Source: Bispira polyomma (Eukaryota). Taken from it: a stretch of 64,000 bases of DNA. The position numbers and the translations under genes were made by a program. Below are positions 54,100 through 63,106 of the stretch, piece by piece. How positions within the stretch are numbered: position 1 is the first letter of the stretch; each line of letters starts with the position of its first letter. The notes under the pieces were generated by a model, which worked only from the letters and a program-made list of their open reading frames with translations, made no database searches and was not told the DNA's origin. Location of the stretch: contig OZ287749.1 in the NCBI GenBank assembly GCA_965649765.1, positions 102,486,001-102,550,000 on the forward strand, written 5' to 3'.

Positions 54100-55769
54100 C
54101 TTCAATGAAAACTAACAATATAAAAGCTTGATCAGATGGCCAGTGTTGGGGAGGCAAGATTCCCTCAATTACACAATGGCCACAGATGAAATGTATGCTT
54201 TTGATGATGCCGTGCCACTGGCTCAGGACAGATTATAAATCTTCCAAAAGGGTATCAATGGTTTTCCAAATCTGAGGAATGTCATCCAGGCTTCCACGTA
54301 CACAAATGTTAATGATCGAATCCTTTTCCACAGACCTTGTCACAATACATTCAACAGAACCAAAATACACTACCAGGCCATCCTTCCATGCCTGTCTGTC
54401 TCCCATGTAATGGCTTTCCTTTGTGGCCTTCCTCTGTAGACAAACACAAACCATCTCAAACACGTTCAAGGGAATTCTGTTGAAAAATTGACACTGCATC
54501 TGGACTGAGGCATGACCTTGATTAAATACCATCAGGCATTCTTTCCTCAGATTATCAGGGCATTTTTGATATTTTACAAACCAGGGAAAGTACAACAGGT
54601 GGTAATCTATGGATATGTTGTAGCACAAATTGAATGCTCTCATCAGCTCAATGAGGGTATCCTTGTCCTCAGCGCTAAGCCCATGCTCTTCCCACAAACA
54701 TGACAGTAACTTTTCCCCAAGAAGACCTTCATTCTGGTATTGTTTTACTGCTGTATTACATTCCAGCTTCTTGAACTTTGCCTGAAGTTTTTCATCTTCC
54801 TCATAGTTGATGACATCAGAAATCCTGTGGTGGAACACAGCTTTCAAAACCGCTATGATGAATTCTAAATCATGAAAGACATAGTGCCTTAATAGAGGGT
54901 TCTGGTCATAGTGCAAAACAAGGTTGGTATCCCTAAAATAGTTCAAAGCTACTAGGGCACGTGCTTTCAGTGTTTCAAAGGCAGCTTCACTGACTGACTC
55001 ATCAGAATCGCTCTCAGTTTCAGTGACTGATTCATCAGAATCGCTCTCAGCTTCATTGGACAACTGGGCAACATAGAAATCAATTGTTTCATCTAAAGAA
55101 AGAAACTTTTGGTTGGACTCTGTGATTCTTCTGTAGAATTTGACCCAGCTCTCAGGAACAGGATCTCGCTTTTTCTTGACAACTTCTTTTAAAAAATCTT
55201 TTACCTCCTCCATCCCTGCATAAGTTAAACTCAAAACCATGAAGTACAACATGCTGGAATTTTTGTGTTGAAACATTTCCACAAGCTGGGAAGTTGAAAT
55301 ACTCAGTCCTTTATTCTTCTGGTCGTCCTTCAATTTACTATAGCTGTTAATTTCACCATCAAGGAACTGGTGTATAGCTGTCTGAATGACAATAGCATTT
55401 CTGGTCATCTGGTTACTGCTAAGGAGGTCTGTGTGGGTCAACAGAACATGCAAGTCGTTGTCCGGGTATTGATGCAGAGCATGCCTCATGATTTCTATTG
55501 CTTCCTCGATCTCTTGTTGGTGTACTTTGGTTATGTCATGGAGAAGAAACACTGTACTCTCTTTGGAGATGAACATGGGACTGGTAATACTGTAAATGCT
55601 GTGACCTCCTTGATCGTAAATGTGGATGATGTCCTCCTTAGTGATGTCCCAGTGCTTGCTATCAATCACTTGTGTTCTATCCCTGATGTTCACCAACACT
55701 CCTTTCCCTTCTTTGAGACTTTCAACAGCACTGGTTTTTCCTGCTTCAGTGAGGCCGAGAAGAACAAGC
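54100..55769 (-). pseudogene. ROC GTPase plus COR exon (TAA at 54233-54235; the frame continues SVLSQWHGIIKSIHFICGHC)
   Basis: P-loop RLVLLGLTEAGKTS lies upstream of the listed ORF start. G2 RTQVID, G3 IYDQGGH, G4 LLTHTD. The COR-like C-terminal W.GI......C..C motif lies beyond the stop. Confidence 0.88.
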
Positions 55770-56709: not shown

Positions 56710-57790
56710 CTACAACTAGACCTAGCGCATCAGAGAACCGATGCATATTTGTATCCACCAGAAAGACAAAGCACCCTCGGTATCAAGCCTCTTAGCTAGC
56801 ACCCAAGCTAGAAGCCTATGATTTCCTATAGGGCATTTATGCTAAAGCCTTAAATGGTACAAGTGGGTTTCACATTGCAAACCTGTGGGACCAATAATAA
56901 GTGTGAGATAGGCACTTTAAAGTTAGGCCTATCCGTTTGACCTTGCACAAGAGGTCCAAGGTCAAATCTGACCACAGCAAAGATTACTAGCCCATCATTT
57001 ATTACGGGATGCTTTCACATCCAAAACATCTATGACCAATCATAAGCGAGATATAAACACTTTTAAGTTTGACCAACTTTAAGTTTGACTGACCTTGAAC
57101 AAGGGGGCCCAAGGTCAAATCGGACCACATCAAAAGATTCCCAGTTCTTGATTTCCTACAGGTTGGTTTCATATTCTAAACCTCTTGGACCAATAATAAG
57201 CAAGATATAAGCATTTTTAAGTTTGGCTATCCGCATTTGACCTTGAACGAGGAGCCCAAGGTCAAATCTGAGCACATCAAAATATTCCCAGCCCATGATT
57301 TTCACAAGCACTTTTAAGTTTAGCCATCCCTGTTTGACCTTGAAGGAGAGGCCCAAGGTAAAACATTTTCCTGCTCATAATTTCCTATAAGTTGGTTTGA
57401 GATCCAAACCTCTAGGACCAATATTAAGCGAGATATAGGGACTTTTAAGTTTGGCACTCTGTCGATGACCTTGAATGAGGAGATTCAAGGTCCGTTAAAC
57501 ATATCACCCGTTCAGATATTCAACCTTCTACAGCTGAGAAACAGACACAGTCAAAAGCCTGATTATTTTCAAAGAAACACCCATGGCGGCCATCTTGTTT
57601 TCAAAATGAGGCCAAAATTACTCACAGGCAAGGTGTAATGAAGAACATTTCCTGTAAATTTCAGGAGCCTAAGTGTAAAAGTTTTCCCAGGAGAGTGGTA
57701 AAATCTCTACAAACACTGACGTGGCTGCGGAGTTTTCCGGTGGGTACAACTATTCATCGTGGCTGACATAAACGACCTTCACCCTTATAT
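56710..57790 (-). mobile_element. HINE/DINE-like element with degenerate internal TGACCTTG...CAAGGTCAAA repeats, in the Roco intron
   Basis: AACTAGAC end, hairpin GCATC...GATGC, 4-5 degenerate internal units, and a GGCGGCCATCTT motif like the 27-kb array. Confidence 0.55.
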
Positions 57791-58265: not shown

Positions 58266-59897
58266 GAGTAGTTATATAGCGGAACATGTTAAAATGTGGA
58301 TATCTCTCAGTGAATATAATATCTAAGTCAATATCAAATACATTTTAATTATGTTAAAAGCACTAGAAAGTGTATTTATTGCCATATAAATCTTAAAATT
58401 GTAGCTTCAGTAACCACAGACATATCAGAATTTACTCAATGCACATTTATCCCCAAACTTTAATAAATGTTCGACATTTTCTTTAAATATCTCAACTAAT
58501 ATTCATTTGAGTTGGAACAGTCAGAAAGCACAAAATAATAGCTTTCTTGTGATACCAAAACATAAATTTTAGCGTAAATATTAATGAAGATATATTTAAT
58601 GCAGTAAAATATTAAGAAACTACCACTATAGTTTAAAGGATATTTTCGAGACACCAATTCATTGATTTTTCATTATGGAGTAAAACAAAGTAAACATTCT
58701 TACAAAAAAAACTAATATTTTTGCAGCTTTTGTCAAAATTTGAGGCCATTATTTGGAGTAATAAGTTTAGAAAAAACAAGATTGTGACAAGAGGGGGAAT
58801 CCAATAATAATGTAACCTGCTTGGCAAAGAAAAGGGATTCCCCAAAACTATCAATCAAATCTGACAATCCCAAGAACTGAAAGTGGCTGTTACTCAATTA
58901 TTTGTACCTGTATTAACACCAAATTATCAATGAATCGTCACTGAAACAGACCCAATATGTATGCCAAATATTGATGCACAGATTCTTGTATGTTCTGACC
59001 TTAGGTTATCCACAGCTGATTGCTGTGGACTTGAAAAAAACTATGATTAGCAATCATTAGTCGACCTTGAAAGGTAAGCTAATGCAAAAAAAAATAGAAG
59101 GCAAAGTATCAACTGATAACAAATATTTTCACAGGTGTAACATCAAAAACCATTGTTTGAAATCGATGAACTACATTGGAATACTTTAATCCTTTCACGT
59201 CTAAGGGAAGCGTTTTCTGATAAAGTACATAAATGGCCATATTTGCCATTTTTGTACACAATCATGAGATTTAATCAATATACAGTAGAACTTCTATTAT
59301 GCAAACATGTTGGGAAGCATGATTTTGTTCGGATATATATAGAAAGACATTTCTGTGTAAAACAATAGGAAAACAGTAATATGGAAGAGTCAGATCCTAA
59401 ATCAAATATTTGATAATAAACGTTTTACTGTATTGCAAGTAGTTTTTTTACTGTAGTGTTCTAGATGCACTCCTAAATACAGTGGTCACCTTATAATTCA
59501 CAGAAACTATATAGAGCATTCTGGCATAAGCCTGGGGATATGAAAACTATAACATAGTGGTGTCGGTATGCATCGACAGACATATCATGGTCATTGTAGG
59601 GTTATTAGTTCACCATTATTTCCATAAACTTTACTATGTACACCAGTTATTAAAGATGCACAATTTGACCTTGTAAATACAAAAAGGTGATAACATTAAA
59701 ATAGTTTTATTTTTACTGCTTTAATATATTTTCAGTTTTACGGAACACAGTCATAACAGAGAAATATCAAGCAGCACTGTAAAGAATTTAAATGTAGCTG
59801 TTTTTAATACTGTATTTACTAGAATATAGGTTGAAATTGATATGCAGATAAAAAAAATTAAATATGCTGCTAATTTAGCGTGTGTGACATGTCATAC

Positions 59898-60217
59898 CTT
59901 TTTCTGGAATTTTGTACCATTTTTGACAGGCATACATCTGTGTAGTAACTATTGATTGCGTCATATCCTTTCCTATATATCTCTCTAGGGGGTTGACTGA
60001 GTGAATTAAAATCTCCTTTTGTGCAAGTACAAAAATGTTGGGTTTCAAACAACTTTTTCCCAAACATGGTAATGAGATTGTCATCCATGTGAAGTGTTTC
60101 CAAATTATAGGGGAAAATATAGTTAGGTGGATCAATGACTCTAATTTGATTGTATGACAGATATAGTTTTCTCAGGTGTTGGTGCTGGCTGAAGTCGCAC
60201 ACTTCACTGATTACATT
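59898..60217 (-). pseudogene. Remainder of the LRR exon after the premature TAA: last LRRs plus the PP.EI...G...I..Y pre-ROC motif
   Basis: Same frame as the 962-aa ORF: NVISEVCDFSQHQHLRKLYLSYNQI...NSLSQPPREIYRKGYDAINSYY...RKR. Donor AG|GTATGA is phase 2 and matches the ROC exon. Confidence 0.88.
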
Positions 60218-63106
60218 TTATGACATCTCTAATTTTTGTATATTACATGGCAAATTTGCTGGATCAATGCTGGTGATATGATTGTCTGACAGATCTAGTT
60301 CACCAAGGTGTCGGTGCTGACTAAAGTCGCACACTTGACTGATTTTATTGTGTGACATATTTACCACTTGTACATTAAAGGGTAGATTCTCTGGATCAAT
60401 GCTGGTGATTTGATTGTCTGACAGATCTAGTTCCCTCAGGTGTTGATGCTGACTAAAGTCGCACACTTGACCGATTTCATTGAGTAGCATCTTTACCACT
60501 TGTACATTAAATGGTAGATTCTCTGGATCAATCCTGATGATTTGATTGTGTGACAGATCCAGTTCCCTCATGTGTTGGTGCTGACTAAAGTCGCACACTT
60601 GACTGATTTTATTGTTTGATATATCTACCACTTGTACATTAAAGGGTAGATTTTCGGGATCAATACCAGTGATTTGATTGTCTGACAGATTTAGTTCTCT
60701 CAAGTGTTGGTGCTGACTAAAGTCGCACACTTGACTGATTTCATTTCCTGACATCTTTACCACTTGTACATTAAAGGGTAGATTTTCTGGATCAATGCTG
60801 GTGATTTGATTGTCTGACAGATCTAGTTCCCTCAGGTGTTGATGCTGACTAAAGTCGCACACTTGACTGATTTCATTTCCTGACATCTCTACCACTTGTA
60901 TATTACATGGTAGATTCTCTGGATCAATCCTGGCGATATCATTGTGTGACAGATCCAGTTCCCTTAGGTGTCGGTGCTGACTGAAGTCGCACACTTGACT
61001 GATGCTATTCCATGACATCTCCAATTTTTGTATATTACATGGTAAATTTTCTGGATCAATGCTTGTGTTTCGATTGTATGACAGATGTAGTTCCCTCAGG
61101 TGTTGGTGCTGACTAAAGTTGCACACTTGACTGATTACATTTCCTGACATCTCTACTTTTTGTATATTATATGGTAGATTTTCTGGATCAATGCTAGTGA
61201 TATGATTGTATGACAGATGTAGTTCCCTCAGGTGTTGGTGCTGACTAAAGTCGCACACTTGACTGATTTTATTTCCTGACATCTCTACTTTTTGTATATT
61301 ATATGGTAGATTTTCTGGATCAATGCTGGTGATTTGATTGTGTGACAGATCTAGTTCCCTCAGGTGTTGATGCTGACTAAAGTCGCACACTTGACTAATT
61401 TCATTCAGTAGCATCTTTACCACTTGTACATTAAAAGGTAGATTCTCTGGATCAATCCTGGTGATATGATTGTGTGACAGATCTAGTTCCCTCAGGTGTT
61501 GATGCTGACTAAAGTCGCACACTTGACTGATTTCATTGAGTAGCATCTTTACCACTTGTACATTAAAGGGTAGATTCTCTGGATCAATCCTGGTGATATG
61601 ATTGTATGACAGATGTAGTTCCCTCAGGTGTTGGTGCTGACTAAAGTCGCACACTTGACTGATTTTATTTCCTGACATCTCTACTTTTTGTATATTATAT
61701 GGTAGATTTTCTGGATCAATCCTGGTGATTTGATTGTGTGACAGATCCAGTTCCCTCAGGTATTGGTGCTGACTAAAGTCGCACACTTGACTGATTATAT
61801 TTCCTGACATCTCTACTTTTTGTATATTATATGGTAGATTTTCTGGATCAATGCTAGTGATATGATTGTATGACAGATCTAGTTCCCTCAGGTGTTGATG
61901 CTGACTAAAGTCGCACACTTGACTGATTTCATTGAGTAGCATCTTTACCACTTGTACATTAAAGGGTAGATTCTCTGGATCAATCCTGGTGATTTGATTG
62001 TGTGACAGATCTAGTTCCCTCAGGTGTTGGTGCTGACTAAAGTCGCACACTTGACTGATTTTATTTCCTGACATCTCTACTTTTTGTATATTATATGGTA
62101 GATTTTCTGGATCAATGCTAGTGATATGATTGTATGACAGATCTAGTTCCCTCAGGTGTTGATGCTGACTAAAGTCGCACACTTGACTGATTTCATTGAG
62201 TAGCATCTTTACCACTTGTACATTAAAGGGTAGATTCTCTGGATCAATCCTGGTGATATGATTGTATGACAGATGTAGTTCCCTCAGGTGTTGGTGCTGA
62301 CTAAAGTCGCACACTTGACTGATTTTATTTCCTGACATCTCTACTTTTTGTATATTATATGGTAGATTTTCTGGATCAATCCTGGTGATTTGATTGTGTG
62401 ACAGATCCAGTTCCCTCAGGTATTGGTGCTGACTAAAGTCGCACACTTGACTGATTATATTTCCTGACATCTCTACTTTTTGTATATTATATGGTAGATT
62501 TTCTGGATCAATGCTAGTGATATGATTGTATGACAGATCTAGTTCCCTCAGGTGTTGATGCTGACTAAAGTCGCACACTTGACTAATTTCATTGAGTAGC
62601 ATCTTTACCACTTGTACATTAAAAGGTAGATTCTCTGGATCAATCCTGGTGATTTGATTGTGTGACAGATCTAGTTCCCTCAGGTGTTGGTGCTGACTAA
62701 AGTCGCACACTTGACTGATTATATTTTCCGACATCTTTACCACTTGTATATTACATGGCAGATTCTCTGGGTTAATGCTTGTGATTTGATTGTGTGACAG
62801 ATTCAGTTCTCTCAGTGGTTCATGCTGGCTAAAATTACAAACCTGACTGAGTTTATTATTTAACAAATCTAAGACTTCCATAGTGCGAGGGATGTTTTCA
62901 GGATTTATCTCCATTATTCTATTATCTTTCAGTTTGAGATATTTTAAGTCTTGAAATGCTGGTTCTTTCCCCAGGTTTGGAACACATTGTAGTACATTTC
63001 CTGATAAATCCACCTCTGTATAGCACACATCTCCACTTAGACTATTAAGTCTTTGCTCCAACTCATTGTCATTAAGGCCCTTCTTGCTCCAATTCATTGT
63101 CTCCAT
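60218..63106 (-). CDS. 962-aa intracellular LRR-only ORF: N-cap plus 20 tandem 44-aa double-LRR units (the last cut by TAA)
   Basis: Uninterrupted ORF with 132-bp periodicity over 60170-62809 and the LxxLxLxxNxI consensus. No signal peptide. Acceptor TTTCAG 10 nt before the ATG. Confidence 0.8.
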   Translation of the reverse strand: METMNWSKKGLNDNELEQRLNSLSGDVCYTEVDLSGNVLQCVPNLGKEPAFQDLKYLKLKDNRIMEINPENIPRTMEVLDLLNNKLSQVCNFSQHEPLRELNLSHNQITSINPENLPCNIQVVKMSENIISQVCDFSQHQHLRELDLSHNQITRIDPENLPFNVQVVKMLLNEISQVCDFSQHQHLRELDLSYNHITSIDPENLPYNIQKVEMSGNIISQVCDFSQHQYLRELDLSHNQITRIDPENLPYNIQKVEMSGNKISQVCDFSQHQHLRELHLSYNHITRIDPENLPFNVQVVKMLLNEISQVCDFSQHQHLRELDLSYNHITSIDPENLPYNIQKVEMSGNKISQVCDFSQHQHLRELDLSHNQITRIDPENLPFNVQVVKMLLNEISQVCDFSQHQHLRELDLSYNHITSIDPENLPYNIQKVEMSGNIISQVCDFSQHQYLRELDLSHNQITRIDPENLPYNIQKVEMSGNKISQVCDFSQHQHLRELHLSYNHITRIDPENLPFNVQVVKMLLNEISQVCDFSQHQHLRELDLSHNHITRIDPENLPFNVQVVKMLLNEISQVCDFSQHQHLRELDLSHNQITSIDPENLPYNIQKVEMSGNKISQVCDFSQHQHLRELHLSYNHITSIDPENLPYNIQKVEMSGNVISQVCNFSQHQHLRELHLSYNRNTSIDPENLPCNIQKLEMSWNSISQVCDFSQHRHLRELDLSHNDIARIDPENLPCNIQVVEMSGNEISQVCDFSQHQHLRELDLSDNQITSIDPENLPFNVQVVKMSGNEISQVCDFSQHQHLRELNLSDNQITGIDPENLPFNVQVVDISNNKISQVCDFSQHQHMRELDLSHNQIIRIDPENLPFNVQVVKMLLNEIGQVCDFSQHQHLRELDLSDNQITSIDPENLPFNVQVVNMSHNKISQVCDFSQHRHLGELDLSDNHITSIDPANLPCNIQKLEMS

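What the first reader, a model, noticed from the sequence alone, without database searches (positions are those of the whole stretch)
60170..62809. Combinatorially shuffled LRR cassette array in a Roco-type receptor: candidate recombination-driven diversity generator
Seen: one exon carries 20 tandem 132-bp units, each with two 22-aa LRRs. Near-invariant DNA blocks (coding SQVCDFSQH and IDPENLP) separate short variable patches. The variable residues sit mostly at non-consensus x positions of LxxLxLxxNxIxx: EL[D/H/N]LS[H/Y/D]N[Q/H/R/D]IT[R/S/G] and [F/Y/C]N[V/I]Q[V/K]V[K/E/D/N]M[SG/LL/SW/SH/SE]N[E/I/K/V/S]. Variants reassort. For example, SHNQITR is joined to FNVQVVKMLLNE in some units and to YNIQKVEMSGNK in others, and SYNHIT occurs with both D and H and with both R and S. 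Known: these x positions form the concave ligand-binding face of LRR solenoids, and LRR module shuffling underlies agnathan VLRs and has been described for brown-algal ROCO genes. Inference: this is an intracellular pattern-recognition receptor whose binding surface is rewritten by unequal crossover or gene conversion anchored on the invariant blocks, here within one exon and not by exon shuffling.
Basis: partly seen in the sequence, partly recalled or inferred. Interest (0 to 1): 0.82.

Follow-up and report, generated by a model that had tools for sequence, protein, structure and literature searches.

The report
Expanded LRR array in broken ROCO gene
The 20-unit leucine-rich-repeat array is real and is a patchwork made by unequal crossover, with most variation on the predicted binding face, but it shows no special diversity machinery and this gene copy carries two premature stop codons.

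Summary
On the minus strand, a single 3.2-kb first coding exon (63106-59897) carries 20 in-register 132-bp units.

The gene belongs to an invertebrate family with the layout LRR, Roc-COR, then a Death domain. At least 10 paralogues in this genome share the exon layout and hold about 2 to 57 units.

Three results support ordinary germline unequal crossover or gene conversion:
- Units cluster by array, while the first units cluster across paralogues.
- Multi-unit duplications are common. In this array, units 2-6.4 match units 7-11.4 (about 585 bp, 2 synonymous differences).
- Site-compatibility tests show mosaicism.

Variation concentrates at LRR positions 5, 7, 8 and 10. The N/S ratio there is about 1-1.5, against 0.18 on the scaffold. 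That fits relaxed or mildly diversifying selection; it is not clearly above 1.

The "invariant blocks" still carry synonymous variation, so they are protein-level scaffold, not DNA recombination signals.

This copy has two in-frame TAA stops, one in unit 20 and one in the COR region. It is probably a recent pseudogene or null allele. Short-read contigs from two samples confirm the first stop.

Somatic or between-individual variation could not be tested. Other first readers of this scan noted the same gene.

The parts
59897..63106 (-). First coding exon, holding the whole LRR domain. The ATG is at 63106-63104. The splice donor AG|GTATGA follows 59897.
   Evidence: ORF and translation. Ten paralogues show the same exon layout, ending ...SKMVQNSRKR|gt.
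62852..63106 (-). N-terminal cap of 85 aa (METMNWSKKGLND...) with degenerate LRRs. It looks hydrophilic, with no obvious signal peptide by eye.
   Evidence: The cap is conserved in the paralogues and in a related species.
60212..62851 (-). Twenty tandem 132-bp units. Each encodes two 22-residue LRRs of the internalin / SDS22 / CtRoco type.
62135..62719 (-). First copy of the recent higher-order duplication (unit 2.0 to unit 6.43).
   Evidence: Self-comparison at a shift of 660 bp gives 2 mismatches in about 585 bp, and a longest identical run of 450 bp.
61475..62059 (-). Second copy of the higher-order duplication (unit 7.0 to unit 11.43).
   Evidence: units 4 and 9 are identical, units 5 and 10 are identical, and units 2/7 and 3/8 differ by 1 nt each.
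60218..60220 (-). In-frame TAA stop in unit 20, codon 42 (LRR position 8 of the second repeat).
   Evidence: Contigs from runs X1 and X2 (sample S1) and X3 (sample S2) span it with 0 differences.
59897..60211 (-). Degenerate 21st unit plus the C-terminal cap (IDPPNYIFPYNLETL...KLFETQHFCTCTKG...SKMVQNSRKR). It is in frame with the array but lies downstream of the TAA.
54122..55769 (-). Roc-COR exon (approximate ends). The P-loop GLTEAGKT and the DQGG motif are intact. A second in-frame TAA sits at 54235-54233, where the paralogues aligned have Q.
49115..49504 (-). C-terminal Death-domain ORF of the same gene.
   Evidence: Pfam Death scores 33.7 bits against a cut-off of 22.6. The segment is collinear with the paralogues.

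Best explanation
The array is the ligand-binding LRR solenoid of one member of a lineage-specific family of kinase-less ROCO proteins in an invertebrate genome. The family layout is N-cap, n x (2 LRR), C-cap, Roc-COR, linker, Death. The ancestral domain had about 3-4 divergent 44-residue double-LRR units. In this genome's subfamily, the 132-bp unit has been amplified independently in each paralogue by ordinary germline unequal crossover or gene conversion between misaligned units, often in blocks of 5-24 units. Crossover junctions inside units produce the chimeric 'reassorted' units. Purifying selection keeps the LRR scaffold (L, N, I, the loop IDPENLP, and SQVCDFSQH). The solvent-exposed concave positions 5, 7, 8 and 10 evolve at a near-neutral or mildly diversifying rate. 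The window's copy has since acquired two nonsense mutations and is most likely a young pseudogene or null allele. Shown here: the array, the mosaicism, the higher-order duplication, concerted evolution, the site-class contrast, and both stops. Inferred: the crossover mechanism, an immune or cell-death sensing role, and the recency of inactivation.
For: Array and register. Higher-order duplication: 585 bp with 2 synonymous differences. Similar multi-unit identical runs of 409-518 bp occur in paralogues at shifts of 9, 17 and 24 units. Mosaicism: 52 of 136-153 informative site pairs fail the four-gamete test, PHI-like permutation p=0.008-0.022. A and B patches are statistically unlinked. Family: at least 10 paralogous exons have the same caps and 2 to about 57 units, including a 2646-aa open exon. 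Concerted evolution: the nearest neighbour lies in the same array for 117 of 124 units in the four expanded arrays, and first units mostly cluster across paralogues (5 of the 9 arrays checked have another array's first unit as nearest neighbour; W, L013 and L017 do not). A related species (Roc-COR 51% identical) has the same exon layout with only about 3-4 divergent double units and no DNA tandem repeat. Selection contrast: in W, N/S is 0.18 on non-concave codons and 1.08 on the 12 a priori concave codons (Fisher p=2e-6). The direction is the same in 5 of 6 arrays. Entropy is enriched at concave positions. Predicted strands cover LRR positions 3-7. ROCO identity. Stops. The first stop is confirmed in contigs of two samples. 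For 5 of 6 repeat words, k-mer depth matches the assembled copy number: 4.1x and 4.2x for a 4-copy word, 2.8x for a 3-copy word, and 1.2-1.9x for single-copy words.
Against: No reads span the whole array, so unit order and number rest on the assembly plus k-mer depth. One 4-copy word shows only about 1.8x depth in sample S2. The N/S counts come from a crude minimum-spanning-tree tally that ignores recombination and transition bias. The 7-site 'hypervariable' class was chosen after seeing the data. No RNA data were found, so expression and the pseudogene status are inferred from sequence alone. The stops could be segregating null alleles in a polymorphic species. It is not known whether samples S1 and S2 are different individuals.
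Confidence: 0.75

Rival explanations
1. The array belongs to a germline-hypermutable sensor family, the animal counterpart of the fungal NLRs whose repeats have high internal conservation. Selection maintains near-identical repeats because frequent unequal crossover and inter-array conversion keep producing new binding surfaces, giving large allelic diversity in the population. The window's copy is then a recently lost member or a donor of units.
For: The arrays show high internal conservation (87-90% nt) in four paralogues with 20-57 units. Hypervariable sites fall on the concave face, and N/S there is about 1-2 in W, L014 and L019. Multi-unit duplications with identical runs of 400-500 bp imply very recent events. 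The ROCO family is heavily expanded in this genome, with 116 Roc-COR matches. A Death domain is the output. The parallels are described in PMC4986451, PMC12222747 and PMC13449251.
Against: No population data are available. N/S is not clearly above 1, and it is 0.5-0.6 in the L013 and C2b arrays. Units cluster by array, so inter-array exchange is at most rare. Nothing distinguishes this reading from the passive instability of any tandem coding repeat. This copy is broken.
Confidence: 0.17
2. The locus makes a truncated LRR-only protein of 962 aa, ending at the TAA in unit 20, which acts as a decoy or regulator independently of the Roc-COR-Death tail.
For: The frame is open from the conserved ATG through 20 units. 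Scaffold codons show strong purifying selection across the array's history (N/S 0.18).
Against: The product would lack the conserved C-terminal cap found in every paralogue. A second independent stop in the COR exon suggests decay of the whole gene rather than selected truncation. The purifying signal dates from before the stops. No RNA evidence was found.
Confidence: 0.05
3. Somatic diversification as in agnathan VLRs, or as hypothesised for brown-algal ROCOs: the array is rearranged in immune cells of each individual.
For: Only the analogy supports this: LRR cassettes, concave-face variation and a mosaic structure.
Against: The germline array is complete and in frame rather than an incomplete gene flanked by donor cassettes. 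The own-genome DNA search found no other match inside the window, and the nearest lies about 0.48 Mb away. Contigs from two samples show no alternative letters or indels in the array. The gene copy is broken.
Confidence: 0.02
4. The mosaic, or the 5-unit duplication, is an assembly artefact.
For: Tandem arrays with blocks about 99.7% identical are error-prone (PMC12222747 shows this for short-read assemblies). One 4-copy word has only about 1.8x depth in sample S2.
Against: Five of six testable words have k-mer depth that matches the assembled copy number in independent short-read data. The assembly is chromosome-scale (75 contigs). Paralogues show the same kind of structure.
Confidence: 0.04

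Closest known systems
Fungal NLR sensor domains with high internal conservation (HIC WD40/ANK/TPR repeats, e.g. Podospora het-d, het-e and the nwd family)
   Same: Both have in-exon tandem repeats that stay nearly identical through concerted evolution. Both have a few hypervariable positions on the binding face. Both gain, lose and shuffle repeats, with unequal crossover as the proposed mechanism, and both are linked to a cell-death output domain (PMC4986451, PMC12222747, PMC13449251).
   Different: The repeats here are LRRs, which were not found in fungal NLRs. The switch module is Roc-COR, not NACHT or NB-ARC. The host is an animal. Mean amino-acid identity between units is 81%, under the 85% HIC threshold. 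Allelic polymorphism and positive selection are not demonstrated here.
Brown-algal LRR-ROCO genes (Ectocarpus, kelps)
   Same: Both are ROCO GTPases with an N-terminal LRR domain whose modules are shuffled and vary in number among fast-evolving paralogues, with diversifying signals at LRR sites. Both are proposed immune receptors (PMC3341825, PMC11378527).
   Different: In the algae each LRR is its own exon, and variation arises by exon shuffling and alternative splicing. Here the whole array lies in one exon and the repeating unit is a pair of LRRs (132 bp). The C-terminal output here is a Death domain.
Agnathan variable lymphocyte receptors
   Same: Both have LRR cassettes with variation on the concave surface and a mosaic composition.
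   Different: VLR genes are incomplete in the germline and are assembled somatically from flanking cassettes. Here the germline array is complete, no flanking cassettes were found, and there is no sign of somatic change. The VLR description rests on established knowledge, not on a test here.
ROCO family proteins: Chlorobium tepidum Roco, MFHAS1/MASL1, LRRK1/2, DAPK1
   Same: The order LRR, Roc, COR matches CtRoco, MFHAS1 and LRRK. The best solved-structure match of the LRRs is CtRoco (6hlu, E=6e-45). A C-terminal Death domain after Roc-COR matches DAPK1.
   Different: Pfam found no kinase or ankyrin domain in the ORFs scanned; the other conserved tail segments were not scanned. The Death domain is combined with LRRs. 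The LRR number is greatly expanded and variable. This copy carries two stops.
Plant NLR and receptor-like-protein LRR domains (xxLxLxx hypervariable positions, unequal crossover within LRR regions)
   Same: Variation concentrates on solvent-exposed beta-strand positions, and repeat number changes by intragenic unequal crossover (established knowledge; reviewed in PMC3782705).
   Different: Plant LRRs are not kept near-identical within a gene, and the switch domain differs.

Membership tests
ROCO (Roc-COR) GTPase family | Roc GTPase domain with a P-loop | tested here: met
   After splicing at 59897/55769 the P-loop reads LVFLGLTEAGKTS and the DQGG (DxxG) motif is present. Pfam Roc scores 25.4 bits, just under the cut-off of 27. 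The 51%-identical homologue P0001 scores 34.1 bits, above the cut-off.
ROCO (Roc-COR) GTPase family | COR domain directly C-terminal to Roc | tested here: met
   Pfam COR-A scores 36.9 bits against a cut-off of 35.3, in the same exon as Roc.
ROCO (Roc-COR) GTPase family | N-terminal LRR domain of the Roco type | tested here: met
   The best PDB sequence matches are the CtRoco entries 6hlu, 8r4b and 5il7, with E from 6e-45 to 3e-29.
ROCO (Roc-COR) GTPase family | Uninterrupted reading frame (a working member) | tested here: not met
   There are in-frame TAA stops at 60220-60218 and 54235-54233. The six paralogues compared are open at the second site (Q shown for the two printed), and the ten paralogue LRR exons are open.
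Death-domain signalling proteins | Death domain | tested here: met
   Pfam Death scores 33.7 bits against a cut-off of 22.6 on ORF 49504-49115.
HIC-repeat immune sensors (fungal NLR type) | Repeats at least 85% identical over at least 100 aa (criterion of PMC4986451) | tested here: inconclusive
   Across the 20 units, mean identity is 80.6% at the amino-acid level and 87.4% at the nucleotide level. Sub-blocks are 97-100% identical.
HIC-repeat immune sensors (fungal NLR type) | Hypervariable sites on the ligand-binding face | tested here: met
   Entropy is 0.99 at concave positions against 0.27 elsewhere (p=0.003). The same positions vary in the paralogues. Predicted strands lie at LRR positions 3-7.
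HIC-repeat immune sensors (fungal NLR type) | Positive (diversifying) selection at those sites | tested here: inconclusive
   N/S is 1.08 on the 12 a priori sites and 1.49 on the 7 post hoc sites in W, and ranges from 0.5 to 2.0 in other arrays. The count is crude and does not account for recombination.
HIC-repeat immune sensors (fungal NLR type) | Repeat-number or repeat-order polymorphism among individuals | not testable with these tools
   Only short-read contigs from one study were available, and none spans the array. Paralogues differ from 2 to about 57 units.
HIC-repeat immune sensors (fungal NLR type) | NACHT or NB-ARC nucleotide-binding domain | tested here: not met
   Pfam finds Roc and COR-A only.
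VLR-type somatic LRR assembly | Incomplete germline gene flanked by donor LRR cassettes | tested here: not met
   The germline exon is complete from N-cap to C-cap. The only own-genome DNA matches inside the window are the array itself, and the nearest other match is about 0.48 Mb away.
Brown-algal ROCO exon shuffling | One LRR per exon, shuffled as exons | tested here: not met
   All 40 or more LRRs lie in one 3.2-kb exon with one continuous frame, broken only by the TAA.

The most novel reading that the evidence does not exclude
This gene family would be an animal, LRR-based counterpart of the fungal HIC-repeat NLRs. Near-identical double-LRR units in a ROCO-Death cell-death sensor would be kept recombination-prone, so that germline unequal crossover, and possibly ectopic conversion from dead copies such as this one, continually creates new concave binding surfaces. 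That would give extreme allelic diversity in unit number and order between individuals.
Probability: 0.25. Interest if true: 0.75.

Novelty: new variant of a known kind. Interest (0 to 1): 0.45.

Why it matters
Rapidly diversifying repeat sensors are documented in plants (NLR LRRs), fungi (HIC WD40/ANK/TPR NLRs), brown algae (exon-shuffled LRR-ROCOs) and jawless fish (VLRs). My literature searches found no report of an animal ROCO-Death family whose LRR solenoid is amplified in-exon to 20-57 near-identical double units with variable concave positions. If the intact paralogues prove polymorphic between individuals, the family would be a tractable example of convergent receptor-diversification logic in invertebrate innate immunity. 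It would also give a candidate function to kinase-less ROCO proteins. For this locus itself the result is more sobering. The copy is broken, and its mosaic needs nothing beyond ordinary tandem-repeat dynamics.

Tried and rejected
- **DNA-level conservation of the 'invariant blocks' as recombination anchors: rejected.** Synonymous heterozygosity is 0.126 inside the blocks against 0.055 outside, a non-significant difference.
- **Preferential shuffling across one block rather than the other: no signal.** The A and B patches are unlinked both within units and across unit boundaries.
- **RNA evidence: none.** The run search listed no RNA run.
- **Verifying array order from reads: not possible.** Only Logan short contigs were available and none spans the array. 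I used k-mer depth against assembled word copy number instead.
- **Expanded arrays in other species: none found.** The word search with the 962-aa LRR piece returned only generic LRR proteins at 30% identity or less. Three loci of a related species have short, divergent LRR exons. The search is limited by query length and word sharing, so absence is weak evidence.
- **Naming the organism: not possible.** Ids are coded. I describe it only as an invertebrate genome of 1.04 Gb.
- **Pfam FN3 call on ORF 53824-53603: no hit**.
- **One Pfam call failed** on wrong frame coordinates and was re-sent without those pieces.
- I did not read proteins through the stops.
Full report
**1. What is in the sequence**

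Tandem Repeats Finder reports one array at 60128-62857 with period 132, 20.7 copies, 87% matches and no indels. The coding strand is minus. An ORF runs from the ATG at 63106 to a TAA at 60220-60218 (962 aa).

The same frame continues after the stop through a degenerate 21st unit and a C-terminal cap. It ends at a splice donor AG|GTATGA after 59897. The LRR domain is therefore one 3,210-bp exon.

In register, the 20 units run from 62851-62720 (unit 1) to 60343-60212 (unit 20). Anchor spacing is exactly 44 residues throughout. Each unit is two 22-residue LRRs:
- LRR-A: L-R-E-L-x-L-S-x-N-x-I-T-x-I-D-P-E-N-L-P-x-N
- LRR-B: [VI]-Q-x-V-x-M-x-x-N-x-I-S-Q-V-C-D-F-S-Q-H-Q-H

The region contains no N.

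**2. The gene and its state**

Downstream on the same strand lie three further parts:
- a Roc-COR exon, with Pfam COR-A at 36.9 bits (above cut-off) and Roc at 25.4 bits (just below cut-off);
- several conserved segments;
- a C-terminal Death-domain ORF at 49504-49115 (33.7 bits).

Splicing 59897 to about 55769 restores ...SRKR-LVFLGLTEAGKTS..., so the P-loop is intact and matches the paralogues' RLVLLGLTEAGKSS. The LRRs match the Chlorobium tepidum Roco LRR best among solved structures (6hlu, E=6e-45). This is a kinase-less ROCO gene with a Death output.

The copy carries two in-frame TAA codons:
- The first is in unit 20 (MS*NV).
- The second is at 54235-54233 in the COR region. The window reads LLEDL*SVLSQW, where the aligned paralogues shown read LLEELQS[VI]LSQW; all six compared have open frames there. 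Conservation continues after the stop.

Contigs from runs X1 and X2 (sample S1) and X3 (sample S2) cover 60028-60342 or 60028-60321 with zero differences. The first stop is therefore not an assembly error. The second stop was not covered by the one read-laying run allowed. I did not examine the remaining tail exons for further lesions.

Each exon was searched by reference.

**3. A gene family with the same exon**

A DNA search of the window's own genome (1.04 Gb, 75 contigs; the window is C2:102,486,001-102,550,000) found arrays about 80% identical on C1, C2 (four more sites), C4, C5, C7, C8 and C9.

After fetching them, ten paralogous exons show the same layout: the N-cap (METLNWSxKGLND...), the same 44-residue unit, and the same C-cap and donor. 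Unit counts are about 2, 2, 4, 7, 13, 15, 24, 27 and 57. The largest is a 2,646-aa open exon at C2:104.915-104.923 Mb. All these frames are open.

The Roc-COR exon gave 116 matches in this genome, so the ROCO family is strongly expanded.

In another species' assembly (ENA ERZ22147071), the Roc-COR exon is 44-51% identical. The three loci inspected there have Roc-COR exons 46-51% identical; two of them show the same N-cap, C-cap and ...HSRKR exon end. They have only about 3-4 divergent double units and no DNA-level tandem repeat; the third (L040) was not translated and has no large LRR ORF upstream. The 44-residue double LRR is therefore ancestral, and the large near-identical arrays are derived in the window's lineage.

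A word search with the 962-aa LRR piece found only generic LRR proteins at 30% identity or less.

**4. How the array evolved**

- **Recent multi-unit duplication.** At a shift of 660 bp (5 units), units 2.0-6.43 equal units 7.0-11.43 over about 585 bp. There are two differences, both synonymous, and the longest identical run is 450 bp. One unequal crossover or conversion event explains why units 7-10 repeat units 2-5. Part of the "reassortment" is therefore counted twice.
- **The remaining 74 bp differ.** The rest of the 660-bp period differs at 17 sites. A single clean crossover would give 660 identical bases, so at least one further event occurred. This is inference.
- **The paralogues show the same pattern.** They have identical runs of 409-518 bp at shifts of 9, 17 and 24 units.
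- **Genuine mosaicism remains.** With units 7-10 removed, 52 of 136 informative site pairs fail the four-gamete test. Incompatibility also rises with distance (PHI-like permutation p=0.008; p=0.022 with all units).
- **The patches are unlinked.** There are 12 A-patches, 11 B-patches and 15 combinations. A and B are statistically unlinked both within units and across unit boundaries.
- **Concerted evolution.** In the four expanded arrays, 117 of 124 units have their nearest neighbour in the same array. First units mostly find their nearest neighbours among the first units of other paralogues (5 of the 9 arrays checked; not W, L013 or L017). This is the classical signature of unequal crossover in tandem arrays, where edge units escape homogenisation.

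**5. Where the variation sits, and selection**

I defined the concave class a priori as LRR positions 2, 3, 5, 7, 8 and 10 of both repeats, which is 12 of 44 codons.

| Measure | Concave class | Other codons | Test |
|---|---|---|---|
| Amino-acid entropy, W | 0.99 | 0.27 | Mann-Whitney p=0.003 |
| Amino-acid entropy, all 167 units | 1.51 | 0.72 | p=0.007 |

The hot positions are unit codons 17, 20 and 22 (LRR-A positions 5, 8, 10) and 39, 41, 42 and 44 (LRR-B positions 5, 7, 8, 10). This holds in every expanded array.

A single-sequence AlphaFold model of the N-cap plus five units (mean pLDDT 66.8) places strands on LRR positions 3-7 of each repeat. That is the standard concave sheet.

Counting changes along minimum spanning trees of unique units gives these normalised N/S ratios in W:
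- 0.37 overall;
- 0.18 on non-concave codons;
- 1.08 on the 12 concave codons (Fisher p=2e-6 for the contrast);
- 1.49 on the seven hottest codons, a class chosen after seeing the data.

Other arrays give 0.52-1.97 for the concave class and 0.31-0.68 for the rest, and the contrast is significant in 5 of 6 arrays. The scaffold is clearly under purifying selection. The concave positions evolve at about the neutral rate or slightly faster. This crude count, which ignores recombination, cannot show omega above 1.

**6. The "invariant blocks"**

Within SQVCDFSQH and IDPENLP, synonymous variants segregate among units at intermediate frequency:
- codon 10: CAT 8, CAC 12;
- codon 29: GAG 9, GAA 10;
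- codon 32: CCA 12, CCC 6, CCT 2.

Mean synonymous heterozygosity is 0.126 in the blocks against 0.055 outside, a non-significant difference. The blocks are conserved as protein: loop and convex-side scaffold. They are not conserved as DNA. Breakpoints necessarily map to intervals without informative sites, so "anchored on the invariant blocks" is not a testable signal here.

**7. Is the array an assembly artefact?**

No record spans the array. However, the k-mer depths of repeat words fit their copy number in the assembly:
- A 4-copy word has 4.1x the single-copy depth in X1 and 4.2x in X3.
- A 3-copy word has 2.8x.
- Single-copy words have 1.2-1.9x.
- One 4-copy word (61163-61218) has only about 1.8x in X3. 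This is unexplained.

No alternative letters or indels were reported inside the array in either sample. Contigs drop rare variants, and it is not known whether S1 and S2 are different animals.

**8. Interpretation**

The best-supported reading (about 0.75) is as follows. This is a lineage-specific, recently amplified LRR solenoid in a ROCO-Death gene family. It was shaped by ordinary germline unequal crossover or gene conversion plus point mutation. The scaffold is constrained and the concave face is free to vary. The copy is now inactivated by two nonsense mutations.

An immune or cell-death sensing role is inferred from three things: the domain logic (variable LRR sensor, GTPase switch, Death adaptor), the family expansion, and published views of LRR-AP-GTPase-COR architectures and ROCO expansions (PMC8195603, PMC3341825, PMC9334734). 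Nothing tested here supports it directly.

The stronger reading is that the family is kept recombination-prone to generate receptor diversity, like fungal HIC NLR repeats (PMC4986451, PMC12222747, PMC13449251). It is compatible with the data but needs population long reads. Somatic diversification has no support.

**9. Relation to earlier notes of this scan**

Other first readers noted the same gene as "intact LRR sensor over a dead signalling tail" and as an unusual Roc-COR-FN3-Death architecture. A paralogue elsewhere was noted as LRR-Roc-COR-FN3-Death.

My checks agree that the tail carries a stop, but they add two points: the LRR exon itself is interrupted, and the Roc P-loop is intact. 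Pfam did not recognise an FN3 domain in ORF 53824-53603.

Noticed in passing
window 54233-54235 (minus strand): A second in-frame TAA lies in the COR region of the same gene, at a codon where the aligned paralogues shown have Q. Conservation continues downstream of it.
   Followed up: partly
G000:C2:104914813-104922750 (L015+L016, minus strand): A paralogous LRR exon has an uninterrupted 2,646-aa frame holding about 57 double-LRR units. It contains multi-unit duplications at shifts of 9, 17 and 24 units. The nearest Roc-COR exon match lies about 37 kb downstream, so it is not certain that the two belong to one gene.
   Followed up: partly
window 61163-61218: This word occurs 4 times in the assembled array but has only about 1.8x single-copy depth in run X3 (sample S2). 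Other repeat words fit their copy number. It could be a copy-number or sequence difference between samples, or noise in contig depth.
   Followed up: no
window 59773-59893: Contigs of all three runs show a joint that skips 119 bases just downstream of the exon-1 donor, inside the intron. It could be an indel allele or a contig from a paralogue.
   Followed up: no
window 50369-51031 (minus strand): A serine/proline/threonine-rich ORF lies between the COR region and the Death domain. It has an internal repeat of roughly 35 residues (EHTTHPPVTS.RSSEPQPVP...). Pfam finds nothing, but the paralogues conserve it.
   Followed up: no
window 56850-57500 (minus strand, intron 1): Several short ORFs repeat a motif FDLGPLVQGQ / LTLGPLVQGQ. 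This is probably a decayed interspersed repeat inside the intron.
   Followed up: no
window 39919-40322: Overlapping minus-strand ORFs are made of a short repeated motif (GCTGHMV..SWLGDVQVT). This looks like a minisatellite rather than a gene.
   Followed up: no
G000 genome-wide: The Roc-COR exon gave 116 matches on 14 contigs. Several form local clusters (for example C10:10.13-10.29 Mb and C14:17.90-18.07 Mb) and several carry stops. This points to a large birth-and-death ROCO family.
   Followed up: no
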